IMG/VR virus record: IMGVR_UViG_3300024358_000009
Location: 1 to 64,000 of that record
Direction: 5' to 3' (one strand)
DNA: 64,000 nt
The notes beneath the pieces were generated by a model, which made no database searches, was not told the DNA's origin, and was given only the letters and a program-made list of their open reading frames with translations. Shown one piece after another: positions 1 through 22,786 of this stretch (position 1 is the first letter of the stretch; each line of letters begins with the position of its first letter). The translations under genes were made by a program, and so were the position numbers.

Positions 1-93
1 CAAGTATACAACCCATTATCAGATGTTCTAATTCATATAGATGAAGATGATGACATTGAATATGTAAATAATAATTATTTTAAAATCTGTTAA
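1..93 (+). CDS. 3' end of hypothetical protein (partial)
   Basis: Frame 1 open from window start to TAA at 91-93 (QVYNPLSD...YFKIC*). Confidence 0.5.
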   Translation, partial: QVYNPLSDVLIHIDEDDDIEYVNNNYFKIC

Positions 94-118
94 TATTTTT
101 TAGTAAACTGCGAATAAA
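90..118 (+). promoter_or_regulatory. variant of repeated bipartite promoter motif (TTAA-N17-CGAATAAA)
   Basis: Intergenic, same spacing as other copies, followed by GGAG RBS and ATG 140. Confidence 0.55.
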
Positions 119-139
119 TATATAGGACAGGAGAATACC

Positions 140-298
140 ATGACTAATGAACAAATTGAAACCCGATTGACCACTCTAGAAAAGATGATGGCTACCGCTA
201 ACCCAAAAGATTTACCAGCGTTAAATGCTAGTTATCAAAAGCTTATGGAAAAACTTGCGGATTCAGATGCCTCAGTTGCCTTCATAAAGGGAAAATAA
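140..298 (+). CDS. hypothetical protein (52 aa)
   Basis: Hand-translated MTNEQIETRL...FIKGK*; GGAG RBS at 130-133. Confidence 0.65.
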   Translation: MTNEQIETRLTTLEKMMATANPKDLPALNASYQKLMEKLADSDASVAFIKGK

Positions 299-299
299 C

Positions 300-581
300 A
301 TGAAGATTAAAGTATCAGATCGGGCGATGTATGGATATATACCTACAGAAAATCCAGATGTATTTAATAGAAAAAGCGTAGTATTTATAAAGGGCAAAGG
401 TTATTACTTCCAAGAAATTTTAGTAAAGATCATTAAACAAACATTGGACGGCATAGTATATGAAATAGAAGAATCAGCACCATATAACAATGTAATAACT
501 ATTAACTTGGAAAACCCAAGAAGGTTTAGCAAGAAAAGGTTAGGCGAACTTTTTGACATTCATGTTAAATGGATTAAATAA
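300..581 (+). CDS. hypothetical protein
   Basis: ORF abutting previous stop; no recognised motif. Confidence 0.6.
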   Translation: MKIKVSDRAMYGYIPTENPDVFNRKSVVFIKGKGYYFQEILVKIIKQTLDGIVYEIEESAPYNNVITINLENPRRFSKKRLGELFDIHVKWIK

Positions 582-593
582 GGGAGTTAATCA

Positions 594-776
594 ATGAAGG
601 AAATTAAATATACCTATGTAGTTGTAACAACTACTGTTTGTATATCTAGCTATGAAGACGATCAAGAAAATTCTATTCGTGGACTTAAACCAGATTTTGT
701 TTCTACAGTTGGTGATTGTTTGGAAGAACTTATGGAGTTTTTGATTTCTTTAGAAAAACAAGTGTGTACAAAGTAA
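594..776 (+). CDS. hypothetical protein
   Basis: GGGAG RBS upstream. Confidence 0.6.
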   Translation: MKEIKYTYVVVTTTVCISSYEDDQENSIRGLKPDFVSTVGDCLEELMEFLISLEKQVCTK

Positions 777-787
777 AGGAGTTAATA

Positions 788-979
788 ATGAATCGGCTAA
801 AAGAAAAGTTTGCATCGTCTAAAGTAAAACTTACCAAGCAAGAGACAAGAATATTATCTCTCCTGCTGTACTACTGTAATAGCCGTATAGGCGATGTTTA
901 TGAGACATTTGAGGATAAGATCAGAGAAGAAGACATAGCTGTAATAGCGAAAAAATTAGGGGCAGAAATACCAAAATAA
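788..979 (+). CDS. hypothetical protein
   Basis: In ORF 716..979; ATG 788 chosen because AGGAG lies just upstream. Confidence 0.6.
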   Translation: MNRLKEKFASSKVKLTKQETRILSLLLYYCNSRIGDVYETFEDKIREEDIAVIAKKLGAEIPK

Positions 980-994
980 CTGAAAGGAAAGATA

Positions 995-1168
995 ATGTAT
1001 GTATATGAGCTAATAGAAAAACTCAAAAAATATCCACAAGATATGTATTTGGAATTTAATGGGGCATATGTCTTTGGTTATATCAAAGATGAGGTAATAA
1101 ACATATGTTACAACCATGATGATAAAGGATGGATTTCTCCAGAAGAAATAAGCGAAAAAATAAAATAA
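995..1168 (+). CDS. hypothetical protein (57 aa)
   Basis: Hand-translated MYVYELIEKLKKYPQD...; AAGGA RBS. Confidence 0.6.
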   Translation: MYVYELIEKLKKYPQDMYLEFNGAYVFGYIKDEVINICYNHDDKGWISPEEISEKIK

Positions 1169-1178
1169 AAAAATTTTG

Positions 1179-1207
1179 TAAATAAAAAGTGGTTACTTAC
1201 GAATAAG
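1179..1207 (+). promoter_or_regulatory. repeated bipartite promoter motif TAAA-N16-ACGAATAAG
   Basis: Intergenic; followed by TATATAG, AAGGAGG RBS and ATG 1249. Confidence 0.75.
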
Positions 1208-1248
1208 TATATAGAGAAGGCAATAACACTATTCAAAGGAGGTTGGTC

Positions 1249-1620
1249 ATGGGTTTGGATAACTACTGGAAAGATCAGCATGGCAAAGAAGGATATGTAG
1301 AAGGATATTTTCGAGTTGTAGGCGGTCTTTGTTCTGGCAATGGCAATGATTCATTCCGTGGAAAAGTTTACAACGAAATAGTTCATGAACTTACAGGAGA
1401 GTCTTTATACCAAGACAAAATCTCAAGCGAGACTGTTAAGGAAATGAACGAAGCTATTCAAGAATGTGAATTTGAAAGAATGAGAAAGCTTACCTGTTGG
1501 GAAATAGAAGAAAATGAGTGGACAGACTTTAAGAGAATGTGGCAAGCACATTCAAACGCACATCATCATTTAGTTAGTTGGTGGTGTGGATGGCTTTTAA
1601 TTAATTGCTGGTTTCAATGA
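1249..1620 (+). CDS. hypothetical phage protein
   Basis: AAGGAGG RBS then ATG 1249; GLDNYW...FRGKVY...SWW pattern resembles phage hypotheticals. Confidence 0.65.
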   Translation: MGLDNYWKDQHGKEGYVEGYFRVVGGLCSGNGNDSFRGKVYNEIVHELTGESLYQDKISSETVKEMNEAIQECEFERMRKLTCWEIEENEWTDFKRMWQAHSNAHHHLVSWWCGWLLINCWFQ

Positions 1621-1647
1621 AATAAAAATAGTTTTAAAACGAATAAG
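1619..1647 (+). promoter_or_regulatory. repeated promoter motif (GAAA-N16-ACGAATAAG)
   Basis: Intergenic; followed by AAGGAGG and ATG 1667. Confidence 0.7.
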
Positions 1648-1666
1648 AATATATAAGGAGGACAAG

Positions 1667-1837
1667 ATGAAAACTGTAACAGTAAAGTTTGTAGTTAATG
1701 ATAATGACGAAGCTGGATTTTTGCTTAATGAAGTAGCAGAAAGTATTGGTAATGGTACTGGTTATCCTTTTATTTTTAGTCTTATTGAAAATAGTACCGA
1801 AGATGAGATTAAATTTTTTACAGAGGTAAACTCATGA
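1667..1837 (+). CDS. hypothetical protein (56 aa)
   Basis: Hand-translated MKTVTVKFVV...; AAGGAGG RBS. Confidence 0.65.
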   Translation: MKTVTVKFVVNDNDEAGFLLNEVAESIGNGTGYPFIFSLIENSTEDEIKFFTEVNS

Positions 1838-1992
1838 AAATAACAATGGAAGAATATACGCTATTGGCTCAAATTTTATTTTATGCCCATGATGACACAA
1901 ACAGAATGAATGAAGAACTAGGACTTAACTATACAACTGAGCAAGTAAATGATCTTGGTAAAAAACTTGGAATTCATATAAATAAAAACTAA
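1834..1992 (+). CDS. hypothetical protein (52 aa)
   Basis: ATGA overlap with previous gene; GAGG RBS. Confidence 0.6.
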   Translation: MKITMEEYTLLAQILFYAHDDTNRMNEELGLNYTTEQVNDLGKKLGIHINKN

Positions 1993-2007
1993 CTATCTAC
2001 GAATAAG
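1979..2007 (+). promoter_or_regulatory. repeated promoter motif TAAA-N16-ACGAATAAG
   Basis: Ends 5 nt before the methyltransferase ATG. Confidence 0.7.
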
Positions 2008-2012
2008 AGTAC

Positions 2013-2915
2013 ATGAGCATGAAAGTTTATGATATGTTTTCTGGGATTGGTGGCTTCTCTCTTGCATTTCAGCAAGAAGGATATGAAGTAACTGCCCAAG
2101 CTGAGATAGATAAATATCCATCTTTGGTTCTACAAAAGAACTTTCCGAACATACCAAACTATGGAGATGTTACTAAGATCAACTATGAAGAAGGTCAGTT
2201 TGATGTAATCATCGGTGGGTTTCCTTGTACAGATATATCCATAGCGAGCAAGACAAAGAAAGGCATTTATGGCGAACGATCTATCTTGTGGAAAGAATTT
2301 TTACGGGCAATCAAAGAAGTCAAGCCAAAATACTGTGTCGTTGAAAATGTCCAAATGCTCGTTAGAAGGGGGCTTAACACAATTCTCGCAGACCTTGCCG
2401 AAGTCGGGTACGATGCGTCTTACACGACCCTTGATGCCCAATTCTGCGGAACCCCACAACGAAGACGCAGAATTTATATTCTGGGAGTGCGTGACGGAAT
2501 CCCCGCAGAAGCCGATCCCTTCCACTTTGCAGAGCGTAGTACAGATGAATGTGGACGAGAAGTACAATCTGTCAAACAGAGCTTTGATTGGAATTTTAAA
2601 GCGGAACACGAAGGGCAAAAAGACTTTGCCTACTTTACTAGACAACGCTCTGATGAATTTACTGGGTGCGGAGTATCATCTACATTGATGAAAAGAGACT
2701 ATAAAGATTTTACCGATGTCATTCTAATAGATGGAAAAGTAAGAAGGGTAACGCCAACAGAAAGACTTCGCCTCATGGGCTTTCCAGATCATTGGCATTT
2801 GGATAACGCCAAAGATACAGACAAGTACAAATATTGTGGAATGGATGTTCATTCAGTTAGATATGTAGCTAGATGTTTAAAGGAATATGACCAATGTTTC
2901 AGTTTGAAAAAATAG
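2013..2915 (+). CDS. C5 DNA cytosine methyltransferase family protein (alpha-type chain)
   Basis: Motif I DMFSGIGG, motif IV GGFPC, motif VI ENV, motif VIII QRRRRIY, RVTPTERLRLMGFPD; motif X divergent (YCGMDV instead of GNxV). Confidence 0.93.
   Translation: MSMKVYDMFSGIGGFSLAFQQEGYEVTAQAEIDKYPSLVLQKNFPNIPNYGDVTKINYEEGQFDVIIGGFPCTDISIASKTKKGIYGERSILWKEFLRAIKEVKPKYCVVENVQMLVRRGLNTILADLAEVGYDASYTTLDAQFCGTPQRRRRIYILGVRDGIPAEADPFHFAERSTDECGREVQSVKQSFDWNFKAEHEGQKDFAYFTRQRSDEFTGCGVSSTLMKRDYKDFTDVILIDGKVRRVTPTERLRLMGFPDHWHLDNAKDTDKYKYCGMDVHSVRYVARCLKEYDQCFSLKK
2269..2688 (+). CDS. putative methyltransferase beta polypeptide (M.EcoHK31I beta-like), nested in +1 frame
   Basis: 139-codon ORF inside the MTase; AAAGG 5 nt before ATG; C-terminus TLQSVV...YNLSNRALIGILKR..KGKKTLPTLLDNAL fits the recalled beta-chain pattern SLSDIL..LS..AC.GILRR...GK.LP..L..AL. 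Confidence 0.65.
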   Translation: MANDLSCGKNFYGQSKKSSQNTVSLKMSKCSLEGGLTQFSQTLPKSGTMRLTRPLMPNSAEPHNEDAEFIFWECVTESPQKPIPSTLQSVVQMNVDEKYNLSNRALIGILKRNTKGKKTLPTLLDNALMNLLGAEYHLH

Positions 2916-3529
2916 CCGATCAGTTTGACGACCATTTAAAAGGCCAATTGTTTTGGCACAAAGATTTTGTCAACCACTTCTTGCCAGAGATTGCATCTGT
3001 ATACATGGAGAAAGATTCTTATGTATATGATTTTGGTGCTAGTACAGGCAATGTAGAAATTGCTTTATCAAACATGATTGAAGAAAGGTGTGTAAACTTT
3101 ACACCAATCGAAAAATGTGTTGAGATGGCAGACAGGTACAAGGGTAATCAAGAAAGACTTATTATTGGAGACTTTTTACATATACCAATTCAAGAGTATT
3201 CTTTTGCTACAAGTATTTTAGCTTTATGTTTTGTTCATCCATCTAAAAGAAAAGGCTTTATTGAAAAGATCAAATCTAAATGCAAAGTTGGTGGGGCGTT
3301 TATCATCCTAGAAAAGATGATTAATTTTGAAGGATATCTTGGTACTGCACTCAGTAGAGTAACTTGGCGAAATAAACTTGAGCAAGGAGAATCTATTAAA
3401 CAAGTTGTGAACAAAGAACTTTCCTTGAGCGGTGTTCAATATCCACTACAAGAGAGTGAACTAGAAGGATTTAGACTTGTATGGGCATATGGTAACTTCA
3501 GATCATATATTTACACAAACGGATTTTAA
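2894..3529 (+). CDS. CmoA-like class I SAM-binding protein (carboxy-SAM synthase family)
   Basis: F..IADQFDDH, VYDFGASTG, GGAFIILEK, W.YGNF align with the recalled E. coli CmoA; overlaps MTase 3' end. Confidence 0.75.
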   Translation: MFQFEKIADQFDDHLKGQLFWHKDFVNHFLPEIASVYMEKDSYVYDFGASTGNVEIALSNMIEERCVNFTPIEKCVEMADRYKGNQERLIIGDFLHIPIQEYSFATSILALCFVHPSKRKGFIEKIKSKCKVGGAFIILEKMINFEGYLGTALSRVTWRNKLEQGESIKQVVNKELSLSGVQYPLQESELEGFRLVWAYGNFRSYIYTNGF

Positions 3530-3534
3530 TTCAG

Positions 3535-3563
3535 TAAATATTTTTTAACTTTCAACGAATAAG
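3535..3563 (+). promoter_or_regulatory. repeated promoter motif TAAA-N16-ACGAATAAG
   Basis: Intergenic; followed by ATTATATAG and AAGGAG. Confidence 0.75.
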
Positions 3564-3586
3564 ATTATATAGAAAAGGAGTTAATC

Positions 3587-3775
3587 ATGCTTGAAGAATT
3601 TAAATGTGAAAATGGTCATTTTGTTATGAATGATAATGTGATGTACATGGTGTTGGACGAAAACATATCGCTTGGAGATTTGATTTGGAATAATGACGGA
3701 GATGTTTTTGAAGTTGGTGAAGATGATGATCTGGTTTATGTAAATGAATACTATTTGAAAGTAAAAAAACTTTAG
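3587..3775 (+). CDS. hypothetical protein
   Basis: AAGGAG RBS. Confidence 0.65.
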   Translation: MLEEFKCENGHFVMNDNVMYMVLDENISLGDLIWNNDGDVFEVGEDDDLVYVNEYYLKVKKL

Positions 3776-3789
3776 AAAAGGAATTAATC

Positions 3790-4194
3790 ATGAAGACTGT
3801 AAACTGCTATGACTATTGCACAACTGAAGATAAGAAGTTTATTTGCATGGCTAATGATATGCTTGAACTTCAATCAAGTATGGAGAAAGGCGATTACGAA
3901 TTTGCCTATTCTGTTTTAAGTGGTAACGGATTTGAACAATACAAATCACTTTCTAGCAAAGAAGTTGATGAACAATACGATGCAATCTCGGACTCTATAG
4001 ATTTTGAAGTAGTGATTAGCATTGCAGAAAATCTAAAAGACAATCTAATAACTCCTCTGCTATATCAAGACAGGGCTATGCAATCAATGTTTGAGGATTT
4101 GGTAAACAAACAACCATTTGTAAAATCTGAAAGGCGAATTAAAAACGCAAGGCAAGAAGTTGCTAGAAGGTTTGGCGAGTACGACAACGATTAA
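3790..4194 (+). CDS. hypothetical protein
   Basis: AAGGA RBS; acidic protein. Confidence 0.65.
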   Translation: MKTVNCYDYCTTEDKKFICMANDMLELQSSMEKGDYEFAYSVLSGNGFEQYKSLSSKEVDEQYDAISDSIDFEVVISIAENLKDNLITPLLYQDRAMQSMFEDLVNKQPFVKSERRIKNARQEVARRFGEYDND

Positions 4195-4199
4195 TACAA

Positions 4200-4272
4200 G
4201 GGCTACTAGCTTAAATAGTAAAGCTCCGAACTCATAATTCGGTGAGTGAAAGTGCAAGTCTTTCGTAGCCCA
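4200..4272 (+). tRNA. tRNA with CAU anticodon (elongator Met or Ile2)
   Basis: Acceptor GGGCTAC/GTAGCCC, D stem GCTT/AAGC, anticodon stem CCGAA/TTCGG with loop CTCATAA, T stem GAAAG/CTTTC with loop TGCAAGT, discriminator A, no encoded CCA; G1:C72 pair argues against initiator. Confidence 0.88.
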
Positions 4273-4286
4273 CTAATTTAGAGGCA

Positions 4287-4481
4287 ATGATGATTACTGT
4301 AATAGATTCTTCAAATCAGTATACTCATAACGAATTTAAAAAAGTAATTATCAATCTATCTAATGATGATGGAAAGGAAGATGTTCTTATAACTATACTT
4401 CCAGACGAATGTTCTATTACGATTGAACACTATTCTTCTGGACAGGAAGAACCATACGAAAAAAGAAAAATAAATTGGTAA
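4287..4481 (+). CDS. hypothetical protein
   Basis: GAGG RBS. Confidence 0.55.
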   Translation: MMITVIDSSNQYTHNEFKKVIINLSNDDGKEDVLITILPDECSITIEHYSSGQEEPYEKRKINW

Positions 4482-4495
4482 ACAAAACGAATAAG
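4467..4495 (+). promoter_or_regulatory. repeated promoter motif (AAAA-N16-ACGAATAAG)
   Basis: At gene junction; followed by AATATAG, AAGGAG and ATG 4526. Confidence 0.65.
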
Positions 4496-4525
4496 AATAT
4501 AGACCTGTCAAGAAAAGGAGTTGCT

Positions 4526-4747
4526 ATGGTAGATGTTTTTATTGTTCGATTGAAGAATCGTGACCATTTTACGATGATGTCGAAAATGGACAAGGCAGAC
4601 TTTTGGGATGGCATTCGTCAGTATTCTAAGAAACTAATATTTGACACTAAAGAAGAAGCATTGCGAATTAGCAAGTATCTTGCAGAAAGAACTTGGCTTG
4701 ATTGGGAAGTTTGCAGTGTTCTTGAGTCTAACTATTGGGAGCAATAA
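4526..4747 (+). CDS. hypothetical protein
   Basis: In ORF 4475..4747; ATG 4526 follows AAGGAG. Confidence 0.6.
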   Translation: MVDVFIVRLKNRDHFTMMSKMDKADFWDGIRQYSKKLIFDTKEEALRISKYLAERTWLDWEVCSVLESNYWEQ

Positions 4748-4989
4748 TGATTGACATGGGCGATGGATGGATTGTTACTTTATCAGATAAATCTTTCCTT
4801 AATGATATGGGTATTAAAGAAAGATATGACTGGTGGAATGATATAAAGAAGGTTACTCGTCTTGAGTTTACCGATAAGGCTAGGGCAGAAGAAACTTGTT
4901 CTATGCTAAATAAAAGAACTGGAATGAAGTGGAAGATTGAAAATAGTTTGTTTACTGGCTTTTATCATGAAAAGAGGCAGCGATCATGA
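4747..4989 (+). CDS. hypothetical protein
   Basis: TAATG overlap with previous stop; GGGAG RBS. Confidence 0.6.
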   Translation: MIDMGDGWIVTLSDKSFLNDMGIKERYDWWNDIKKVTRLEFTDKARAEETCSMLNKRTGMKWKIENSLFTGFYHEKRQRS

Positions 4990-5216
4990 AGATAGACCAA
5001 GCAATCAATATGCTTCAAGAAGCAAAAGCTAATGGATCAAAGAATATTATCTTTGCCTTTTGGGAAGCTAATGTCTTTGAAAGAAAGGCTGGCAAGACTT
5101 TTAAAGATAATGAAACATGGGCAAACATAGCTAACTTTATTGATGAGAATATGGATTGGGCTTATGTTCATGAAAGCTTACAGGAAATTATCAGCGAAAA
5201 CTATGTAAAGGATTAG
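4986..5216 (+). CDS. hypothetical protein
   Basis: ATGA coupling. Confidence 0.6.
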   Translation: MKIDQAINMLQEAKANGSKNIIFAFWEANVFERKAGKTFKDNETWANIANFIDENMDWAYVHESLQEIISENYVKD

Positions 5217-5218
5217 CA

Positions 5219-5428
5219 ATGAGCAAAGACGATATACTTCATTATCTAAATGCCAAGAGTGAGTATACTGCAAATGTCAATCTTCGTAATTATACAGATC
5301 AACAATGGTCTATATCATTTGATGAAGATAGTGTAACTATTAGTACGAAAGCTATAAAGAAAAAGCTTAAGTATAATTCTTTTACTAAAAAAGATTTTGA
5401 TGAAATTTTTGAAACATCAAACGAATAA
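5219..5428 (+). CDS. hypothetical protein
   Basis: Packed ORF. Confidence 0.55.
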   Translation: MSKDDILHYLNAKSEYTANVNLRNYTDQQWSISFDEDSVTISTKAIKKKLKYNSFTKKDFDEIFETSNE

Positions 5429-5429
5429 T
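5401..5429 (+). promoter_or_regulatory. variant promoter motif (TGAA-N16-ACGAATAAT)
   Basis: At gene junction before GAGGA RBS. Confidence 0.45.
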
Positions 5430-5443
5430 AAATAGAGGATGTT

Positions 5444-5707
5444 ATGACAACATTTGAAGAACAGCCAAAAACAAAGAAGCCAAGGATGAGCGAAGATAAA
5501 ATCTTAAATGAAGTTTTTATTCAAATGGGAAAACCAGATAATATTAATATTATCAAGGCAACTGCCGTTAATGTATTTGCTAATAGATATAGAGTTAATA
5601 TTTGGCAAAGCATTAACAATCCTTTTTTGCCTAAAGCTGGCAAGATTGTCGCTAGTTATTTTGTAATTGTTTACGATAGTGGAGAGGTGGTTATCAATAA
5701 TGATTGA
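5444..5707 (+). CDS. hypothetical protein
   Basis: GAGGA RBS; NVFANRYRVNIW pattern. Confidence 0.65.
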   Translation: MTTFEEQPKTKKPRMSEDKILNEVFIQMGKPDNINIIKATAVNVFANRYRVNIWQSINNPFLPKAGKIVASYFVIVYDSGEVVINND

Positions 5708-5972
5708 GTCTTACAGAATGCTTTTAAATTATTTTGCAGCAGAAAATACCCAATCAAAAAATGGCGAAGTACAAATAAACTGTAATAACTTTGATAGTGG
5801 ATTAATTATAAAAAATATTGATGATAGAAGCGTACTTATAAAAGTAAAAGATAGAACAGAACCTCAAAATATGAGAGTTCTTTTTTATCCAATCAAGTAT
5901 AATGTATTGGAGAAGGCTTTAAGTTCTTTAGAAAAGGAAATTAAAAATGGTATGGTGGGAAATCAAATCTAA
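5700..5972 (+). CDS. hypothetical protein
   Basis: In ORF 5667..5972; ATG 5700 follows GGAGAGG. Confidence 0.55.
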   Translation: MIESYRMLLNYFAAENTQSKNGEVQINCNNFDSGLIIKNIDDRSVLIKVKDRTEPQNMRVLFYPIKYNVLEKALSSLEKEIKNGMVGNQI

Positions 5973-6180
5973 TACCCTATCTTTAGCTAGATGGCTTAAA
6001 GAAGAAGGCGAATGGGATAACGCAGGAAACACAGAACTTCCAAGCGGAGAAGTTGTTGACGATGATCCAATCGCAAGACTTATTTATTATTTTGAAAAGC
6101 CTTGGAAGTATGAAAGTGAATGGAATAAATATCAAAATTTTTTAAATAAAAAATCTTTACAAACGAATAAGATTATATAG
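5947..6180 (+). CDS. hypothetical protein
   Basis: Packed ORF. Confidence 0.55.
   Translation: MVWWEIKSNTLSLARWLKEEGEWDNAGNTELPSGEVVDDDPIARLIYYFEKPWKYESEWNKYQNFLNKKSLQTNKII
6143..6171 (+). promoter_or_regulatory. repeated promoter motif TAAA-N16-ACGAATAAG
   Basis: Shares ACGAATAAGATTATATAGAAA with the 3555 copy; followed by AAGGAG. Confidence 0.75.
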
Positions 6181-6193
6181 AAAGGAGAAACAA

Positions 6194-6745: not shown

Positions 6746-7009
6746 ATGGCTACTAAAGGACAGACTTGGAAGCAAAATAGAGACATTACTCCGGAGGAAT
6801 TCGTAAAAGTATTTACCGAAAAAGACTCTGTTGAAGAAGTCGCTGAACACTTTAAAATTAGTGTTTCTTCTGTAAGAAATAGGGCTTATTCATTAAAGCG
6901 TTCTGGAGTCAATCTTAACACTAAAAAGAAGAATTCTAATTCTTTCTTTGGCACTTCTAAATTTGATGTAGATGCCCTAAATAAAATTGTGCAGAAAGCG
7001 AATAAGTAG
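6746..7009 (+). CDS. helix-turn-helix DNA-binding protein
   Basis: SVEEVAEHFKISVSSVRNRAYSLKR is an HTH pattern. Confidence 0.6.
   Translation: MATKGQTWKQNRDITPEEFVKVFTEKDSVEEVAEHFKISVSSVRNRAYSLKRSGVNLNTKKKNSNSFFGTSKFDVDALNKIVQKANK
6978..7006 (+). promoter_or_regulatory. repeated promoter motif (TAAA-N16-GCGAATAAG)
   Basis: At end of HTH gene, exact spacing. Confidence 0.6.
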
Positions 7010-7100
7010 TCATGCCACTAAAACCTACAGCTGGATTTGATTGGTTTGTCTTTTTGTCTTGTTTGCTTGGATTCATTGGTGGTTTTATAAGGAGATAATT

Positions 7101-9223: not shown

Positions 9224-9856
9224 ATGTACACAGTAATAATACCAACAATGTGGGTTAATGTTACTTTATTAGAAAAAATGATATGTATATATAATCAGTC
9301 TAACTACATCAATGAAATTATAATAATAGACAATAATCCAATCGATAAAATAAAACTTGATTTTAAAAAAGTAAAAATACTTACAAAAAATAAAAATATA
9401 TATGTTAATCCAGCATGGAATTGGGGCGTGTCTGAATCTAACAACGAAAAAATTATAATAGCCAATGATGATATTTTAATAGAAAATTTTGAAAACATAA
9501 TTATAAAAATTGATGAATTTTTAAAAGATAAAATTGTAATAGGTTTAAAAACCAAATTATTAGAAAATGAAAAGCAACAAGTCTCTATAATAAAATGCCA
9601 AAAAAGACCTTATGGATGGGGTACTTTTATGGCTATGAATAAAAAATCATATATTTATGTTCCAGAATATTTAAAAATTTGGGCTGGAGATGATATTCAG
9701 TTTAATAATAATGATCCTTATATAATTTTAGGAGCAGATATAAAAACAAAAATGTCTGAAACTGTAAAAAAATATAATCTTAGAGTTATGGCAAAAAGAG
9801 ATTCTCGTCTTTACAGAACAAAATGTAATCCAGACGGATCTCTTAAACAATTGTAA
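9224..9856 (+). CDS. glycosyltransferase family 2-like
   Basis: TVIIPT, IIIIDN, YVNPAWNWG, IANDDI. Confidence 0.75.
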   Translation: MYTVIIPTMWVNVTLLEKMICIYNQSNYINEIIIIDNNPIDKIKLDFKKVKILTKNKNIYVNPAWNWGVSESNNEKIIIANDDILIENFENIIIKIDEFLKDKIVIGLKTKLLENEKQQVSIIKCQKRPYGWGTFMAMNKKSYIYVPEYLKIWAGDDIQFNNNDPYIILGADIKTKMSETVKKYNLRVMAKRDSRLYRTKCNPDGSLKQL

Positions 9857-9899
9857 CTGCAAATCGAAAAAGTTAATGTAACAACAAAAGGAGTTAATA

Positions 9900-12881: not shown

Positions 12882-12910
12882 TTAATTTTTTGACGATTGT
12901 GACGAATAAG
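12882..12910 (+). promoter_or_regulatory. repeated promoter motif (TTAA-N16-ACGAATAAG)
   Basis: In 180-bp intergenic gap; followed by AAGGAGG. Confidence 0.7.
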
Positions 12911-12936
12911 ATGATATACAACTCAAGGAGGTAAGT

Positions 12937-14932: not shown

Positions 14933-14961
14933 TTAAGTTTTCGTCAGCGTTGACGAATAAG
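14933..14961 (+). promoter_or_regulatory. repeated promoter motif (TTAA-N16-ACGAATAAG)
   Basis: Intergenic; overlaps inverted repeat CGTCA-N4-TGACG. Confidence 0.7.
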
Positions 14962-14969
14962 TGAGTAGG

Positions 14970-15000
14970 AAGTTGGTGTGTTGCCAACTTAGTTTTTGTT
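14970..15000 (+). promoter_or_regulatory. leader hairpin with T-tract (attenuator- or terminator-like)
   Basis: AAGTTGG/CCAACTT stem then AGTTTTTGTT, between promoter motif and RBS. Confidence 0.45.
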
Positions 15001-15267: not shown

Positions 15268-15302
15268 AAAGAAGGGGGGCTTTATGCTCCCCTTTTCTTT
15301 TT
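15268..15302 (+). terminator. intrinsic terminator
   Basis: AAGAAGGGGGGC / GCTCCCCTTTTCTT stem with T-run. Confidence 0.7.
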
Positions 15303-16555: not shown

Positions 16556-17105
16556 AAAATTCTTAGAAAATAAAGATAGTTGCTGTGAGTTAAATCCAGT
16601 ATTAAATATTAACAACGAAAGAGTTGTTTTTATAACATCTAACAATTATTTAATTTCAAAGTATTTTTTTAATATAGTTAAAACTTATGCCATAGAACAA
16701 GATATGGATATACTAGAAAATTCAAAAAATTTTATGAGTATGGAAAAGTCATTAGATAATTTAATGGCACTAATAAAAGAGTCATGCAATAACAATAAAA
16801 AACATATAATTATGTTGAACAACTTTGATGTTTTTTTTGATGACGAGACTTGTTTGGGTGTTGCAAAAGAACTTATTGACTATATTAAAAATCCATCTGA
16901 TGATTTTTGTGGTATAGTTTTTTTAACGAATAGGTCAAAATCAATAGAACCATTTTTAATGGAATCTCCTTCTCATTTAAAAATCAATCAAGTTTGGTGT
17001 CTTGGTGAATATGTTTGTCGCAAAATCGAAGAAAAGAGTATGGAGAAGTTATTGGCTGAGTCAATTGATGCTGTTAATAAAACTCTTGCTTGTAAATATT
17101 TTTAA
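16530..17105 (+). CDS. hypothetical protein, possibly degenerate AAA+ fold
   Basis: IIMLNNFDVFF Walker-B-like and IVFLTN sensor-1-like; no Walker A. Confidence 0.35.
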   Translation: MIQFLNNLKKFLENKDSCCELNPVLNINNERVVFITSNNYLISKYFFNIVKTYAIEQDMDILENSKNFMSMEKSLDNLMALIKESCNNNKKHIIMLNNFDVFFDDETCLGVAKELIDYIKNPSDDFCGIVFLTNRSKSIEPFLMESPSHLKINQVWCLGEYVCRKIEEKSMEKLLAESIDAVNKTLACKYF

Positions 17106-17168
17106 GGGAATTTTTATAGGCATTACTATTTATATCCTTATAAAAACTTTTAAGTTGAGGAATTTTTT

Positions 17169-19866: not shown

Positions 19867-19867
19867 C

Positions 19868-20383
19868 TTATTCTCCTGACCATATTTTTTCTTCTGGGCC
19901 TAATAATCTAGCTAAAGTAAATAAAAAATCGCTTAATCTATTTATGTATATAACAATGTTTTTAAGATATTGGTGAACTTCCATTAATTTAACTAAATCA
20001 ATTTCAACCCTACGACATACTGCTCTAGCAAGATGAATTTCGCAATGATTAAATGGTATAATAAAATTTTTAAGTGGCTTTAAATGTTTTGTCATCTCAT
20101 CAATTTTTTGCTCAAGTTGTTTAATGTGATCTTCTTTAATTCTTTCTTTTCCGGTAGCTATTTCAGCACCTATATCAAATAAATGTTTCTGTGTTTCAAC
20201 AATAAAATCGTAAATGTTTTGAACTTTAAGTTCTAATATATATCTTTGATTTACAAGACCTATTGAAGCATTAAGCTCATCCACGCTTCCAAGAAGTTGA
20301 ATATGTGGATCGGTTTTTGGAACACGCCCAACTTTTGGCAAAAGAGTTGTTCCATCATCTCCAGTTTTAGTATAAACCTTCAT
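19868..20383 (-). CDS. pduO: ATP:cob(I)alamin adenosyltransferase, PduO/MMAB type
   Basis: KVYTKTGDDGTT, GSVDELNASIG, LFDIGAEIA, HLARAVCRRVE, YINRLSDFLFTLAR. Confidence 0.92.
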   Translation of the reverse strand: MKVYTKTGDDGTTLLPKVGRVPKTDPHIQLLGSVDELNASIGLVNQRYILELKVQNIYDFIVETQKHLFDIGAEIATGKERIKEDHIKQLEQKIDEMTKHLKPLKNFIIPFNHCEIHLARAVCRRVEIDLVKLMEVHQYLKNIVIYINRLSDFLFTLARLLGPEEKIWSGE

Positions 20384-21023
20384 TTTTGCTCCAATCTAAG
20401 ATTTTTATCTTTGATTCCATACCTATTTTTGTAAAAGGAAATCCATGAAAGCCAAATGGTTTTTCATTATATTCTTCTGTTTTATGTTCTATTGAAAATT
20501 CAAAAGCCGTTCTTAAATCTGGAAATTTAAACTCGTTTTTTATTAATTCATCATAAGAGTGATAACATATTTCTAAATCTTCATTAAATATGATTGGTTT
20601 ATTTTGATATTTATTTGATATATGTTCCATTAATTTTTTTGACCTTAGACTAAAACCGCCATTGCCAACTTTATTTACATGATCATGATTTTTCCAAGGA
20701 GCACCAATATAATCATACTGTAAAAATTTTTCTGACCAAGAATCTGGATTAATTACAAATCCATCATATTGAATTAATAAAACATATTCTGTATTTATAT
20801 ATTTCACTAAATCACGCAAAATAAAAGCACTATATTCTTCCTTGCTATTTATTTTTTTTACTTGTATGAATTCTATTCTGTCTGTTTTTAGTTCATTTTT
20901 ATCAGATATAAATATACATCTTTTAAAATTTATACTTTGCATACTATATAACATGGCAGAAATTGCTTTTTTATGATTTAAGCAATCAACAGCACACAAA
21001 GTAATATTATTTAGTGAAATCAT
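20367..21023 (-). CDS. DUF5672-like protein (GT-A-like)
   Basis: LLIQYDGFVINP..W...FLQYDYIGAPW, VGNGGFSLRS, NED. Confidence 0.75.
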   Translation of the reverse strand: MISLNNITLCAVDCLNHKKAISAMLYSMQSINFKRCIFISDKNELKTDRIEFIQVKKINSKEEYSAFILRDLVKYINTEYVLLIQYDGFVINPDSWSEKFLQYDYIGAPWKNHDHVNKVGNGGFSLRSKKLMEHISNKYQNKPIIFNEDLEICYHSYDELIKNEFKFPDLRTAFEFSIEHKTEEYNEKPFGFHGFPFTKIGMESKIKILDWSKNEGLY

Positions 21024-21507
21024 AAAGACATATTAATCTTTTTGTATTAGAGTCAATAGCTATTTTTTCTAATATTGGTATTTCTTCAAACCATTCAAAT
21101 AAAGTTTCCTCACTTATATTATGATGACAATCATTTGGTCTATTCCACTTGTATGGAACTGATACTATGAGTTTATTAACTATTTTTTTAAGTTCATTAA
21201 ATACATTTTTTTGTCTTCCTTCAAAATGTTCAAATGCTTGTAAGCATATAGCTAAATCAAACTTATGATTGAATGTCCAAGGTGTAATTGTACAATCAAA
21301 TACATAATTTATATGTTTGTTATGTTGTTTTTCTATTCTTACGGAATTTAAACACAACGGAAAATATGAACATCCTAATTCTAAAATAGACAGTGGATTT
21401 AAATTTTTTGCAATTTCTATTACTTCTTTATAATAATTCCATCTTTTAACAAAATATTTGTCTTCTTTACATTTTTTATCATAATCTTCTTTTGTAACAA
21501 ATTTCAT
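21007..21507 (-). CDS. class I SAM-dependent methyltransferase-like
   Basis: ILELGCS, FDLAICLQAFEHF, LIVSVPY. Confidence 0.7.
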   Translation of the reverse strand: MKFVTKEDYDKKCKEDKYFVKRWNYYKEVIEIAKNLNPLSILELGCSYFPLCLNSVRIEKQHNKHINYVFDCTITPWTFNHKFDLAICLQAFEHFEGRQKNVFNELKKIVNKLIVSVPYKWNRPNDCHHNISEETLFEWFEEIPILEKIAIDSNTKRLICLYDFTK

Positions 21508-21899
21508 TTTTTAGGACTTTTTGTTTTTATTCCTAATTGCTTATATACATTTCTTGCTTTTGGATTGTCATCTATTGCTAATATAACTTTGTCCTTAATG
21601 CTTTCTGCGTGTTTCTTTTTTGATTCTAATTGTTGTTCTTTATTGTTTCCAATATTATTCATCATTAGTCTATTATATTTAATTCCTGATTTTTTTAAAA
21701 CTTTTGTTGTTTCTGATCTATCTGATTCTGGTCTTCCTGTAACTATATAAATTTTATTTGTTTTTGCTAATTCATTAACATAATCAATCATTTTTTTAAT
21801 TGGATATATACCATTACGAATAATAGTGTTATCTATATCAACAATAACTACTGTTGATTTGCTAAAGAATTTCTCAACTTGTTGGTAAAGGTTCAGCAT
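21504..21899 (-). CDS. HAD-superfamily phosphatase (PseT C-terminal-like)
   Basis: VDIDNT, IVTGR, AIDDN. Confidence 0.8.
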   Translation of the reverse strand: MLNLYQQVEKFFSKSTVVIVDIDNTIIRNGIYPIKKMIDYVNELAKTNKIYIVTGRPESDRSETTKVLKKSGIKYNRLMMNNIGNNKEQQLESKKKHAESIKDKVILAIDDNPKARNVYKQLGIKTKSPKK

Positions 21900-22095
21900 T
21901 GTATCGCCCCATTGTAATATTCTTTGTTGCAACAACATCCTTATTAGTAAATTCCCATATTAATCCATTATTAAGAATAACAGTAAATACTTTCTCTATT
22001 TCAGTGCCATATTCAGTAACTAACCAAATTCTTCCCCTACCTTTTGGAGTTTCTACTTCTAATTCTTGTCTTGGTTCATATATCACAATTGGCAT
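21874..22095 (-). CDS. conserved phage hypothetical protein
   Basis: ETPKGRG...EYGTE...IWEFTN.D.....NITMGR pattern. Confidence 0.65.
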   Translation of the reverse strand: MPIVIYEPRQELEVETPKGRGRIWLVTEYGTEIEKVFTVILNNGLIWEFTNKDVVATKNITMGRYNAEPLPTS

Positions 22096-22756
22096 TTTTA
22101 ATCTCTATCGCAGAATCTCTTCTGCATAAATCTTGATATAATTTTTTATCTTTCGACCATTCTTTGCCTGTCCACCACTCAAATCCATTCAATTCACTTT
22201 TATAAATACAGCATTCTTCGTAACCACCCATCATATAATAATAAATACACCCAGATTTTTTAGCTAAAGTAGTTTCAATTAGCGTACTAACATTTCCTAA
22301 AGAAAGTTGTGGTTTTTTATAATCCCACGCAAATTGAACTCCGACAAAAGATTTTTTAAAAAGCTTATAACAAACAAACCCTATCAATTCTGATTCATAA
22401 AAATATTGAATTGAATTTTCTAACATAAGCTCATTATCAAAAACATGTTCGCTAAGAAAACCTCTTTTTGTTTGATAACACTTTGATATTCTTTCAACAT
22501 CTTCCTTAGATGGTTTTCCTAATTGATATTCTATCTTTTTGCTTATTTTTTTTGTTTTTTTATGGCATTCTAGTTCTGACAAGTTATACCTTATTGATCT
22601 TGCTTGAAACCAATAATCGTTCCAAGGTAACCAACCATTTTCTAATAAATTATCTAAATCGTCATTAATTTCTGGGTATCCAAAAACACCACAGTGAATT
22701 AAATCTTGATTAGATATTTTTCCAAAACCATTTATATGATCAAAAAATATTTTCAT
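22076..22756 (-). CDS. arginyl/leucyl-tRNA-protein transferase-like (ATE1/Bpt family)
   Basis: LLENGW, C-terminal FAWDY....SLG....LIE...AK..G..YYYMMGGY..C.IYK...GFEW. Confidence 0.65.
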   Translation of the reverse strand: MKIFFDHINGFGKISNQDLIHCGVFGYPEINDDLDNLLENGWLPWNDYWFQARSIRYNLSELECHKKTKKISKKIEYQLGKPSKEDVERISKCYQTKRGFLSEHVFDNELMLENSIQYFYESELIGFVCYKLFKKSFVGVQFAWDYKKPQLSLGNVSTLIETTLAKKSGCIYYYMMGGYEECCIYKSELNGFEWWTGKEWSKDKKLYQDLCRRDSAIEIKNANCDI

Positions 22757-22757
22757 G

Positions 22758-22786
22758 TAAATATTTACACTTAATTAACGAATAAG
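22758..22786 (+). promoter_or_regulatory. repeated promoter motif TAAA-N16-ACGAATAAG
   Basis: Fills the divergent gap between 22756(-) and 22807(+). Confidence 0.75.

What the first reader, a model, noticed from the sequence alone, without database searches (positions are those of the whole stretch)
90..22786. Twelve-copy bipartite promoter with sigma28 (FliA/SigD)-like geometry
Seen: ACGAATAAG at 1199, 1639, 1999, 3555, 4487, 6163, 12902, 14953 and 22778, with variants at 110, 5421 and 6998, all at or near gene junctions and most followed by an RBS. TAAA sits exactly 17 nt before CGA in six copies and TTAA in three. Established: the sigma28 consensus TAAA-N15-GCCGATAA has the same 17-nt TAAA-to-CGA distance. 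Inference: early genes use the host flagellar sigma, tying infection to a motile stage, or a phage-encoded group 3 sigma outside this window.
Basis: partly seen in the sequence, partly recalled or inferred. Interest (0 to 1): 0.75.

Follow-up and report, generated by a model that had tools for sequence, protein, structure and literature searches.

The report
Promoter set for a phage-encoded sigma
The repeated ACGAATAAG motif is a real two-part promoter present about 35 times in an uncultivated 149-kb river phage, and it is most likely read by a small ECF-type sigma factor that the phage itself encodes just upstream, not by the host's flagellar sigma.

Summary
All nine exact ACGAATAAG copies lie on the + strand (0.4 expected by chance), and two of the three proposed variants are good copies; the 5,421 copy fails. 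The full motif is tgTAAATA-N15-rrCGAATAAG-N2-TATAtA. The window has 17 strong copies and the 149.3-kb genome has 35, against one strong antisense copy; 26 of the 35 are intergenic. The block starts 430 nt after a phage gene for a 162-aa two-domain ECF-like sigma at 137,557-138,045, outside the window. That gene has its own conserved sigmaA-like promoter. Relatives with other alleles of this sigma use retuned promoters with the same spacing: CGAATAGA where the sigma is 34% identical, and TGAATA...CGAATAAT where it is 27-32% identical. No cellular genome among 185,579 species holds more than one copy of the composite motif. All 35 copies differ from the sigma28 consensus at 3-5 of 12 positions. 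The sigma28-like spacing is real, but use of the host FliA is not supported. This is a new member of a known kind and of moderate interest.

The parts
90..126 (+). Promoter copy (C of CGA at 111; TTAATA-N15-CGAATAAA); start codon 29 nt after C
   Evidence: PWM 32.6 bits, intergenic; lies in the 140-bp stretch shared with genome B
1179..1215 (+). Promoter copy (C at 1200), upstream of a 123-aa gene
   Evidence: PWM 34.7 bits, intergenic
1619..1655 (+). Promoter copy (C at 1640; GAAATA -35 variant)
   Evidence: PWM 27.3 bits, intergenic, SD and ATG 27 nt after C
1979..2015 (+). Promoter copy (C at 2000); the DNA methyltransferase ORF opens with ATG at C+13 (2013), a probable leaderless mRNA
   Evidence: PWM 27.5 bits; ORF 2013-2915; methyltransferase; ATG at +13 with no room for an SD
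3535..3571 (+). Promoter copy (C at 3556)
   Evidence: PWM 35.2 bits, intergenic
4467..4503 (+). Promoter copy (C at 4488; AAAATA -35 variant)
   Evidence: PWM 26.6 bits, intergenic
6143..6179 (+). Promoter copy (C at 6164), overlapping the last 16 nt of the upstream gene
   Evidence: PWM 31.5 bits
6978..7014 (+). Promoter copy (C at 6999); ATG at C+13 (7012) opens a 28-aa hydrophobic peptide conserved in genome B
   Evidence: PWM 28.8 bits; orthologous copy at 154,932 in B; peptide comparison
9844..9880 (+).
   Evidence: PWM 18.6 bits, intergenic; the orthologue in B at 157,677 is a better copy at 27.1 bits
11310..11346 (+). Candidate internal copy (C at 11331; CGAAAGAG), the least certain of the set
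   Evidence: PWM 20.6 bits, 151 nt inside a small gene; no orthologue examined
12882..12918 (+). Promoter copy (C at 12903; TTAATT -35 variant)
   Evidence: PWM 23.3 bits, intergenic; orthologue in B at 162,785
14933..14969 (+). Promoter copy (C at 14954), followed directly by a hairpin and T-run at 14970-14990
   Evidence: PWM 23.6 bits; orthologue in B at 164,871; terminator-like hairpin
17006..17042 (+). Weak internal copy (C at 17027; CGAAGAAA)
   Evidence: PWM 11.1 bits here but 25.3 bits at the orthologous place in B, 166,921
22758..22794 (+). Promoter copy (C at 22779) in the 50-nt gap between divergent genes
   Evidence: PWM 28.6 bits; orthologue in B at 172,670
34644..34680 (+). Internal copy (C at 34665; CGAACAAG), 61 nt before the next gene
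   Evidence: PWM 24.5 bits; conserved place in B at 180,257
43982..44018 (+). Internal copy (C at 44003), 151 nt before the gene at 44154
   Evidence: PWM 18.4 bits; the orthologue in B at 190,109 is a better copy at 25.7 bits
47017..47053 (+). Internal copy (C at 47038), 259 nt before the DnaB-like helicase gene
   Evidence: PWM 21.8 bits; orthologue in B at 193,141 scores 26.4 bits; helicase
52020..52056 (+). Internal copy (C at 52041), 287 nt before the DNA polymerase gene
   Evidence: PWM 19.6 bits; orthologue in B at 198,102 scores 27.2 bits; polymerase

Best explanation
The motif is the promoter class of a sigma factor that the phage itself encodes. The window is the first 64 kb of a phage genome of about 149.3 kb. 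At 137,557-138,045, outside the window, lies a gene for a 162-aa sigma-70-family protein with only a sigma2 and a sigma4 domain, so it is ECF-like. Inferred sequence of events: after infection, host RNA polymerase with its primary sigma transcribes this gene from a dedicated promoter (A/T tract, TTGnnn-N17-TAnnnT) that occurs once in the genome. The new sigma binds host core polymerase. Its sigma4 domain reads the -35 block (tgTAAATA, about -34 to -29) and its sigma2 domain reads the -10 block (rrCGAATAAG, about -13 to -6). Transcription starts at the conserved purine 13 nt after the C of CGA. This switches on about 35 promoters in one continuous block that begins 430 nt after the sigma gene. 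Eighteen sit in 8.7 kb of tiny genes and short ORF-less RNAs, 13 more in window 1-23 kb, and four weaker internal ones lie in the replication module (34.7-52 kb), two of them just before the helicase and DNA polymerase genes. The genes served are therefore middle or delayed-early. The late structural block on the opposite strand carries none of these sites; it has a different short motif. Shown here: the motif, its strand and position bias, its bipartite conservation, the sigma gene and its fold class, and the co-variation across relatives. Inferred: who reads the motif, the start site and the timing.
For: 1) The signal is real and directional: 48 copies of at least 12 bits on the + strand of the record against 2 on the - strand, with 0.35 expected. 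Of the 35 strong copies in genome A, 26 are intergenic in a genome that is 6.8% intergenic. 2) The footprint is bipartite. At 10 orthologous sites in the co-assembled relative B, the -35 block is 83% and the -10 core 96% identical, against 59% for the spacer and 54-60% for the flanks. 3) The phage encodes a sigma: Sigma70_r2 30.3 bits, Sigma70_r4 25.2 bits, TIGR02937 sigma70-ECF 53.5 bits (cut-off 42.9). The best PDB sequence match is ECF SigH. The AlphaFold model (pLDDT 85.6) has two helical domains joined by a disordered linker, and the top 11 Foldseek matches are ECF sigmas. 4) Position: no copy lies upstream of the sigma gene or of the first + strand genes, and the first copy comes 430 nt after the sigma stop. 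The same order holds in L026, L084, L086 and L087. 5) Co-variation: sigma 100% and 59% identical go with TAAATA/CGAATAAG (25/26 and 14/14). L033 has a close backbone (terminase 83%, portal 80%) but a 34% sigma, and it uses mostly CGAATAGA. Sigmas of 27-32% go with TGAATA (42/42) and CGAATAAT (39/42). The L086 backbone (terminase 64%) is as far from A as that of L026, which keeps CGAATAAG, so promoter type follows the sigma allele and not overall distance. 6) The motif is not a cellular signal: 24 single scattered hits in 185,579 species, and multi-copy viral contigs belong only to this phage. 7) No phage RNA polymerase was found. 8) The sigma gene has a separate conserved sigmaA-like promoter, unique in the genome. 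9) The start-codon geometry requires the start site to lie at or before the TATA block; ATG sits exactly at C+13 at two sites. 10) There is precedent: the sigmas of phages phiEco32 and 7-11 read phage-specific promoters (PMC4331800).
Against: The -35 block is the same (TAAATA) in L033 although its sigma4 recognition helix is very different (STATISLRWNII against SPGYVSQQLSRA), which is unexpected if sigma4 reads that block base by base. Near-constancy of the CGAATA core while the sigma falls to 27% identity would also fit a conserved host-encoded reader. The co-variation rests on about seven genomes and on two or three independent changes, and different hosts could produce the same pattern. The -35 block lacks the AAC typical of ECF promoters. 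In the distant subclade the motif can be read as TTGAAT-N18-AATAAT, which approaches a primary-sigma promoter. The host is unknown.
Confidence: 0.7

Rival explanations
1. The host's flagellar sigma (sigma28, FliA or SigD) reads the motif, tying expression of these genes to motile host cells.
For: The TAAA-to-CGA distance of 17 nt matches TAAA-N15-GCCGATAA, and both contain a CGA core. Some genuine E. coli FliA promoters tolerate CGAA, for example tsr with GCCGAAAA (table in PMC4203485). The CGAATA core stays constant while the phage sigma diverges to 27%, which would fit a conserved host reader.
Against: All 35 copies have 3-5 mismatches to the 12 consensus positions, and 34 of 35 have 3-4 in the -10 octamer: an extra A between CGA and TAA, and no GC before CGA. 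The canonical consensus is not enriched and never overlaps a copy. No cellular genome has more than one copy of the composite motif. Relatives shift the -35 block to TGAATA and the last -10 base to T or A, in step with the phage sigma allele. The phage carries its own sigma at the head of the block. It seems unlikely that about 35 of the strongest phage promoters would depend on a scarce, FlgM-controlled host sigma (inference).
Confidence: 0.06
2. The host's primary sigma reads the motif as an unusual early promoter, alone or after modification by a phage protein (sigma appropriation in the manner of T4 MotA/AsiA). The ECF-like sigma would then serve another promoter class.
For: In the distant subclade the motif reads TTGAAT-N18-AATAAT, which is close to TTGACA-N17-TATAAT. 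A/T tracts upstream resemble UP elements. In L033 a copy lies upstream of the sigma gene itself, so there the sigma would belong to the regulon.
Against: In this phage the base at the place of the near-invariant -7 T is G in 25 of 26 copies, and it is A in B and L033. The -35 block matches TTGACA at only 2 of 6 positions. The invariant CGA is not a primary-sigma feature. A separate sigmaA-like promoter class exists in the same genome for the sigma gene. Generic sigma70-type matches are at or below chance in these regions (33 against 52, and 98 against 101).
Confidence: 0.1
3. Another phage factor reads the motif: the second sigma-like protein (210 aa, - strand, about 135,140-135,772) or an unrecognised phage polymerase or activator.
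For: A second protein with weak sigma region 2 similarity exists (20.1 bits, below the cut-off). It is much better conserved than the ECF-like sigma (76% against 34% in L033), which would fit the constant CGAATA core. A 2,647-aa protein and many small proteins remain unannotated.
Against: The 210-aa protein has no detectable sigma4 domain, so it is a poor candidate for a promoter with a fixed -35 block. It heads the late, opposite-strand block, which has its own motif, GGTGTAA. No polymerase domain was found, and the giant proteins are a tape measure and fibres. This explanation does not account for the shifts in promoter sequence that accompany changes of the ECF-like sigma allele while this protein stays at 54-76%.
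Confidence: 0.1
4. The motif is not a promoter but another repeated signal, such as an operator for a repressor, an RNA processing or translation signal, or a recombination or replication site.
For: No transcript ends were mapped. The third block, TATAtA, and part of the motif would lie in or next to the transcript.
Against: Two conserved blocks at fixed spacing around a variable spacer, a one-strand orientation matching the genes, a position 19-60 nt before start codons, and A/T tracts upstream are the anatomy of a sigma-type promoter. Two ORFs begin 13 nt after the C without any Shine-Dalgarno sequence.
Confidence: 0.04

Closest known systems
Sigma28 (FliA/SigD) promoters, TAAA-N15-GCCGATAA
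   Same: Both are bipartite. The 17-nt distance from TAAA to CGA is the same, the -10 block has a CGA core, and the start lies a few nt after the -10 block.
   Different: The -10 block is rrCGAATAAG, with one extra base between CGA and TAA and no GC before CGA. That gives 3-5 mismatches at every copy. Relatives use TGAATA at -35. The candidate reader has no region 3 and scores 35 bits on the FliA/WhiG model, whose cut-off is 189.6.
ECF (group 4) sigma factors and their promoters, e.g. B. subtilis sigmaW/sigmaX and E. coli sigmaE
   Same: The protein has the two-domain sigma2-linker-sigma4 build of about 160 aa, and its best sequence and fold matches are ECF sigmas. The promoter has a -35 block, a spacer of 16-17 nt and a -10 block beginning with CG. 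From memory and not verified here, sigmaX is TGTAAC-N17-CGAC and sigmaW is TGAAAC-N16-CGTATA. L033 has a copy upstream of the sigma gene, as with ECF autoregulation.
   Different: There is no AAC in the -35 block. The protein scores far below every specific ECF subfamily model. No conserved anti-sigma partner is present, because the Cys-rich ORF after the gene occurs in only some relatives. It is viral and isolated: only 3 cluster representatives score below E = 1e-10 among 1.84 billion. In this phage the sigma gene is not autoregulated.
Sigmas of phages phiEco32 (gp36) and 7-11, with their middle and late promoters
   Same: In each case a phage-encoded sigma redirects host polymerase to conserved phage-specific promoters downstream of its own gene, after early transcription by the host sigma (PMC4331800).
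   Different: Those promoters are single-block -10-type elements (tAATGTAtA) without a -35 block and occur in low copy number. Here the promoter is bipartite with about 35 copies. No sequence relationship to those sigmas was tested.
Bacillus phage SPO1 gp28 middle-gene sigma cascade
   Same: Both are large low-GC phages in which host sigmaA expresses a phage sigma, which then reads a bipartite promoter class for the next set of genes; a further phage factor serves late genes (established knowledge; PMC13401047 abstract).
   Different: From memory, the gp28 consensus (AGGAGA...TTTnTTT) is unrelated. No homology to gp28 was shown. This phage clade is uncultivated and its host is unknown.

Membership tests
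Sigma28 (FliA/SigD)-dependent promoter | -35 element TAAA | tested here: met
   TAAA at -21 to -18 relative to the C of CGA in most copies (T 25/32, A 30-31/32). Relatives with another sigma allele have TGAA at 42 of 42 sites.
Sigma28 (FliA/SigD)-dependent promoter | Spacing of TAAA to the CGA core (15 nt plus GC, giving 17 nt) | tested here: met
   Fixed at 17 nt in all strong copies.
Sigma28 (FliA/SigD)-dependent promoter | -10 element GCCGATAA or GCCGATAT | tested here: not met
   34 of 35 copies have 3-4 mismatches in the octamer and none has fewer than 2. The consensus with up to 2 mismatches is not enriched (12 against 8.7) and never falls on a copy. Comparison set: E. coli FliA sites in PMC4203485.
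Sigma28 (FliA/SigD)-dependent promoter | Read by a group 3 sigma (sigma2+sigma3+sigma4), with the same motif in front of host flagellar genes | tested here: inconclusive
   The host is unknown. No genome of 185,579 species carries the composite motif more than once, but the strict pattern would miss a looser host regulon. The only complete sigma in the phage has no region 3.
ECF (group 4) sigma factor | Only sigma2 and sigma4 domains, joined by a short linker; no regions 1.1 or 3 | tested here: met
   162 aa. r2 covers residues 14-72 and r4 residues 126-159. The model has helices at 7-84 and 108-161 and a disordered stretch at 88-104. The top 11 fold matches are ECF sigmas aligned over their full length.
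ECF (group 4) sigma factor | Passes a curated ECF family model | tested here: met
   TIGR02937 sigma70-ECF superfamily: 53.5 bits against a cut-off of 42.9. All specific subfamily models score far below their cut-offs, so it belongs to the superfamily only.
ECF (group 4) sigma factor | Cognate promoter with AAC in the -35 block and CGT in the -10 block | tested here: not met
   The -35 block is TAAATA or TGAATA, with no C. The -10 block begins CGA, not CGT. The reference consensus is from memory; I could not retrieve it from the papers searched.
ECF (group 4) sigma factor | Co-transcribed anti-sigma factor and positive autoregulation | tested here: not met
   No CGAATAAG-type copy lies upstream of the sigma gene in A, L026, L084 or L086; only L033 has one. 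The Cys-rich 55-aa ORF after the gene is present only in A and L028.
Phage-encoded sigma with a cognate promoter class (SPO1 gp28 or phiEco32 gp36 type of system) | A sigma gene in the phage, and a conserved non-host-like promoter repeated in front of a block of phage genes, pointing the same way as them | tested here: met
Phage-encoded sigma with a cognate promoter class (SPO1 gp28 or phiEco32 gp36 type of system) | Sigma gene expressed from a different (host-type) promoter and placed ahead of its regulon | tested here: met
   A unique conserved TTGnnn-N17-TAnnnT element with an A/T tract lies 85 nt before the gene and is shared by 7 relatives. The first regulon copy comes 430 nt after the gene. 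Activity was not measured.
Phage-encoded sigma with a cognate promoter class (SPO1 gp28 or phiEco32 gp36 type of system) | The sigma confers specific initiation at the motif on host core polymerase | not testable with these tools
   This needs in vitro transcription or 5'-end mapping. Co-variation of sigma allele and promoter is indirect support only.

The most novel reading that the evidence does not exclude
This phage clade holds a natural series of matched sigma and promoter pairs. Exchange or rapid divergence of one small ECF-like sigma gene has been followed by retuning of tens of promoters across the genome, from CGAATAAG to CGAATAGA, CGAATAAA or CGAATAAT and from TAAATA to TGAATA. One case, L033, has a backbone about 80% identical but a sigma only 34% identical. 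If the pairs are truly cognate and mutually selective, they record regulon-wide co-evolution of promoter and sigma. They would also be a ready-made set of orthogonal, minimal sigma-promoter pairs that differ at one or two defined bases.
Probability: 0.5. Interest if true: 0.6.

Novelty: new member of a known kind. Interest (0 to 1): 0.45.

Why it matters
The result replaces an attractive but unsupported idea, a phage tied to its host's motility sigma, with a testable and more ordinary one: a three-tier transcription programme driven by the phage's own sigma factors. The phage is an uncultivated freshwater phage that is abundant in many river metatranscriptomes. It gives an annotated regulon of about 35 promoters with a predicted start site and graded strengths, a candidate reader protein of only 162 aa, and relatives whose promoters differ at defined positions. 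This is useful material for studying how minimal sigma factors read DNA, and possibly for orthogonal expression parts. It is also a reminder that matching spacing and a shared CGA core are not enough to assign a promoter to sigma28.

Tried and rejected
1) Direct transcript-start evidence. I did not resend that stretch. 2) Using the ends of short assembled contigs as a proxy for transcript ends. The contigs run across the predicted boundaries and are uninformative. 3) Nucleotide and protein searches of cultured-phage records. There is no close relative, so neither host nor taxonomy could be borrowed. PF00562 gave no match. PF00940 gave no match either, but its control also failed, so that result is inconclusive. 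The giant proteins are a tape measure and collagen-like fibres, and one 2,647-aa protein stays unannotated. 5) TATAtA as a sigmaA-type -10 box. Rejected because in several copies the Shine-Dalgarno sequence follows within 1-4 nt, and two ORFs start at C+13, so the start site must lie at or before that block. 6) Retrieving the ECF consensus from reviews. It was not found in the texts held, so the ECF promoter comparison rests on memory and is marked as such. 7) Rfam matches for the ORF-less transcripts. Only tRNAs and one sub-threshold hammerhead were found, and the folding z-scores are unremarkable (-1 to -2.2). 8) Simple residue-to-base rules between sigma alleles and promoter types. None emerged, and L033 is an exception for the -35 block. 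9) One Pfam batch failed on a coordinate I had mistyped and one translation was off by one base; neither was needed. 10) Host identification was not achieved.

Full report
WHAT THE WINDOW IS. The window is the first 64 kb of a 206,326-bp IMG/VR virus record. The record is composite. Positions 1-149,317 are one genome, which I call A. Positions 149,318-206,326 are a 57-kb piece of a related genome, B. It is colinear with 1-59 kb of A at 68-84% nucleotide identity and is joined to A through a 140-bp stretch that is 97% identical. Three independent contigs of the same phage run straight from about 139-149.3 kb into window position 1, so 149,317 and 1 are neighbours in the real genome. My own gene call gives a + strand block from 136,052 through the record start to 68,887. 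It holds tiny genes followed by a replication module with ribonucleotide reductase, DnaB-like helicase, UvsX-like recombinase and a DnaE-type polymerase. The - strand block, 69,049-135,869, holds late structural genes: large terminase, portal, head protein, a 3,976-aa tape measure and collagen-like fibres. There is no close cultured relative. The phage is found in many riverine metagenomes and metatranscriptomes. Its host is unknown. Genes carry strong Shine-Dalgarno sequences, and the G+C content is 31.7%.

THE OBSERVATION. Anchoring the 32 CGAATAAG copies of the record on the C of CGA (position 0) shows three conserved blocks: tgTAAATA at -23 to -16, rrCGAATAAG at -2 to +7, and TATAtA at +10 to +15. 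The 15 nt between the first two blocks are not conserved, and phased A/T tracts lie further upstream. An iterated matrix finds 48 copies of at least 12 bits on the + strand of the record and 2 on the - strand, against 0.35 in Markov controls. Genome A has 35 copies of at least 18 bits, 17 in the window and 18 at 138,475-147,163. Of these, 26 are intergenic although only 6.8% of the genome is, and 4 more lie in the last 20 nt of the upstream gene. In 24 of them a start codon follows within 65 nt. The one at 5421 has no -35 block and scores -1.0. The six TAAA and three TTAA counts are correct.

IT HAS THE ANATOMY OF A SIGMA-TYPE PROMOTER. At ten places where A and B are orthologous, the -35 block is 83% identical and the -10 core 96%, against 59% for the spacer and 54-60% for the flanks. 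At the five intergenic pairs the figures are 87% and 97% against 39-49%. Several copies are followed by the Shine-Dalgarno sequence within a few bases of the TATA block, for example 138,700, 146,939 and 1,640. TATAtA therefore cannot be a -10 box, and the start must lie at or before it. At two copies an ATG sits exactly 13 nt after the C with no room for a ribosome-binding site. One is the 300-aa DNA methyltransferase ORF (ATG at 2013). The other is a 28-aa hydrophobic peptide (ATG at 7012) that is conserved in B, where it has an ordinary leader. Position +13 is a purine in 46 of 48 strong copies. I therefore predict the start at C+13, which puts the blocks at about -34 to -29 and -13 to -6. 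This is an inference. By chance alone, one or two ATGs at +13 would be expected among 35 copies, so the argument rests on both being real gene starts without a Shine-Dalgarno sequence.

WHO READS IT. The genome encodes a sigma-70-family protein at 137,557-138,045 (L018:2558-3046), outside the window. It has 162 aa, scores 30.3 bits on Sigma70_r2 and 25.2 bits on Sigma70_r4, and reaches 53.5 bits on the sigma70-ECF superfamily model TIGR02937 (cut-off 42.9). On the FliA/WhiG model it scores only 35 bits against a cut-off of 189.6. Its best PDB sequence match is ECF SigH. The AlphaFold model (pLDDT 85.6) is a sigma2 domain, a disordered linker and a sigma4 domain. The top 11 Foldseek matches are ECF sigmas, and sigma28 ranks 23rd. 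No phage RNA polymerase was detected. There is no motif copy upstream of this gene or of the first + strand genes, and the first copy comes 430 nt after its stop codon. The gene instead has its own element: an A/T tract and then TTTTTGCTATTGnnn-N14-CGA-TAnnnT, which reads as TTGnnn-N17-TAnnnT and so looks like a primary-sigma promoter. It is conserved in A, L026, L028, L032, L034, L084 and L086 and occurs once in genome A. Generic sigma70-type matches are at or below chance in both promoter-rich regions.

COMPARATIVE TEST. The sigma family is small: only three cluster representatives score below E = 1e-10 among 1.84 billion. Contigs that carry its members keep the same gene order: terminase, a second sigma-like gene, the divergent junction, the sigma gene, then tiny genes. 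Downstream of each sigma the dominant repeated word is a version of the motif, found without using the matrix. L026 (sigma 59% identical) has TAAATA at 14/14 and CGAATAAG at 14/14. L033 (sigma 34%) has TAAATA at 9/10 and mostly CGAATAGA, and one copy lies 72 nt before the sigma gene itself. L084, L086, L087 and L089 (sigma 27-32%) have TGAATA at 42/42 and CGAATAAT at 39/42, with GTATGG at the start block. B, whose sigma is not in the record, uses CGAATAAA. L033 is the closest backbone to A (terminase 83%, portal 80%, second sigma-like protein 76%) but has the divergent sigma and a shifted -10 end. L026 and L086 are equally distant in backbone (terminase 64% in both), yet only L086, with the 32% sigma, has the altered promoter. 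So promoter type follows the sigma allele and not overall divergence. The sigma4 recognition helix and region 2.4 differ among the alleles. However, L033 keeps TAAATA with a very different helix, which is the main observation that does not fit.

THE SIGMA28 IDEA. The spacing argument is correct, but the -10 block is not GCCGATAA. Every copy has 3-5 mismatches to the 12 consensus positions, and 34 of 35 have 3-4 in the octamer (real FliA sites for comparison in PMC4203485). The consensus with up to 2 mismatches occurs 12 times in the window against 8.7 expected, and never at a copy. A scan of one genome for each of 185,579 prokaryote species for TAAATA-N15-CGAATAAG-NN-TATA gave 24 single hits scattered over unrelated taxa, archaea included, which is about what I estimate by chance. 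No genome has two. In IMG/VR only contigs of this same phage have several. That strict pattern could miss a looser host regulon, so sigma28 is disfavoured but not excluded.

MODEL. The host primary sigma expresses the phage sigma gene. The phage sigma then turns on about 35 promoters whose scores fall along the genome: about 30-40 bits at 138-147 kb, 23-35 bits for most copies in window 0-23 kb, and 18-25 bits for the four internal copies in the replication module, two of which lie before the helicase and polymerase genes. The late block has none of these sites. It carries a short motif, wwtGGTGTAa, in 4 of its 9 intergenic gaps and before about five further late genes. A second protein of 210 aa with only a sigma2-like region heads that block. 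This three-tier layout parallels SPO1 and phiEco32/7-11. What is shown: the motif statistics, the footprint, the sigma gene and its fold class, the gene order and the co-variation.

LIMITS. No transcript ends could be examined. The ECF promoter consensus used for comparison is from memory (searches did not supply it). Gene calls come from my own simple caller. The literature library holds no described promoter containing CGAATAAG.

VERDICT. This is a new member of a known kind of system. Interest is moderate, raised somewhat by the natural series of sigma alleles with retuned promoters.

Noticed in passing
window 1-140 and G000:C1:149,318-206,326: The 206-kb record is not one genome. It is a complete genome of about 149.3 kb followed by 57 kb of a related strain at 68-84% identity, joined at a 140-bp near-identical stretch. 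Three other contigs show that 149,317 is directly followed by position 1.
   Followed up: yes
G000:C1 - strand at 69,753; 76,723; 91,679; 95,084; 112,919; 122,419; 127,920; 130,768; window 38,971 (+): A different short motif, wwtGGTGTAa, lies just upstream of late structural genes, in 4 of the 9 intergenic gaps of the late block. One + strand copy at 38,971 is conserved in genome B (185,096). It is a candidate late promoter, and it loosely resembles the phiEco32/7-11 consensus (tAATGTAtA, tGATGTtata).
   Followed up: partly
L010:1129-1761 (-), i.e. G000:C1 about 135,140-135,772: A second sigma-like protein of 210 aa heads the late block. Its sigma region 2 match is weak (20 bits), it contains a Cys/His cluster, and no sigma4 domain is detectable. 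It belongs to widespread viral families and is far better conserved among relatives (54-76%) than the ECF-like sigma.
   Followed up: partly
L018:3046-3101 (G000:C1 138,045-138,100): A sub-threshold match to the type II hammerhead ribozyme (29.7 bits, gathering score 37, E = 0.013), with CUGAUGAG and GAAA cores, lies directly after the stop codon of the sigma gene.
   Followed up: no
L018:4681, 6803 and 8945 (G000:C1 139,680; 141,802; 143,944): Three promoter copies spaced about 2.1 kb apart each drive 50-90 nt without an ORF. Each of these ends in a shared module, GAGCCTGGA...GATAA..TTATC, a hairpin followed by an A/T tract and the next promoter. They may be a family of short non-coding RNAs. 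There was no Rfam match.
   Followed up: partly
L018:11075 (+) and 11251 (-) (G000:C1 146,074 and 146,250): The only strong antisense copy of the motif (27.1 bits) faces the copy at 146,074 across about 175 nt. The two would produce fully complementary RNAs from a G+C-rich, well-folding segment (z = -2.2), next to tRNA-Leu(TAA) at 145,869-145,942.
   Followed up: no
window 14,970-14,990: A hairpin followed by a T-run starts 3 nt after the predicted start of the 14,954 promoter. The orthologous place in genome B has a hairpin of different sequence, also followed by a T-run. It may be an attenuator or mark a very short transcript. A strong terminator-like hairpin follows at 15,270-15,296. Terminator-like sites are enriched in 1-20 kb (16 against 6.2 expected).
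   Followed up: partly
window 2,013 and 7,012: Two genes begin with an ATG exactly 13 nt after the C of the motif and have no Shine-Dalgarno sequence, so they are probably leaderless mRNAs. One is a DNA methyltransferase. The other is a 28-aa hydrophobic peptide, MPLKPTAG..., which my gene caller missed and which is conserved in genome B.
   Followed up: partly
window 52,328-56,776: The DnaE-type DNA polymerase is encoded as two ORFs (631 and 541 aa). A separate RNase_T/DnaQ-like exonuclease gene (54,476-55,141) lies between them.
   Followed up: partly
window 4,200-4,273: tRNA-Met(CAT) lies among the tiny genes (Rfam 62.6 bits, and also found by ARAGORN).
   Followed up: yes
L018:2240-2350 (G000:C1 about 137,240-137,350): A strikingly G+C-rich segment (GGGTGGGG...CCGCCCACCCCCCGGGGCCGGGCCGGG) in a 32% G+C genome lies between the 2OG-Fe(II) oxygenase gene and the promoter of the sigma gene. 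It is conserved in several relatives and may be an insulating terminator or a structured RNA.
   Followed up: no
L018:3128-3295 (G000:C1 138,127-138,294): A 55-aa Cys-rich ORF (CxxC...CCxC) lies between the sigma gene and the first promoter copy. It is shared with L028 but absent from L026, L033 and L086. It could be a zinc-ribbon regulator or an anti-sigma factor.
   Followed up: partly
L033:10001-10489 compared with G000:C1 137,557-138,045: In a relative whose neighbouring proteins are 70-83% identical, the ECF-like sigma is only 34% identical. That one gene has been exchanged or has diverged very fast.
   Followed up: yes
L029:64-11994 (-), i.e. G000:C1 79,663-91,593: The tape-measure protein has 3,976 aa, which implies an exceptionally long tail. 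Three large collagen-repeat fibre proteins are also present, one of them with a CBM_5_12 module.
   Followed up: partly
whole phage (runs X1-X24): More than twenty riverine metatranscriptome runs hold between a third and all of the sampled words of window 1-6000, and DNA runs from related samples also hold the phage. It is therefore common, and perhaps actively transcribed, in that river system.
   Followed up: no
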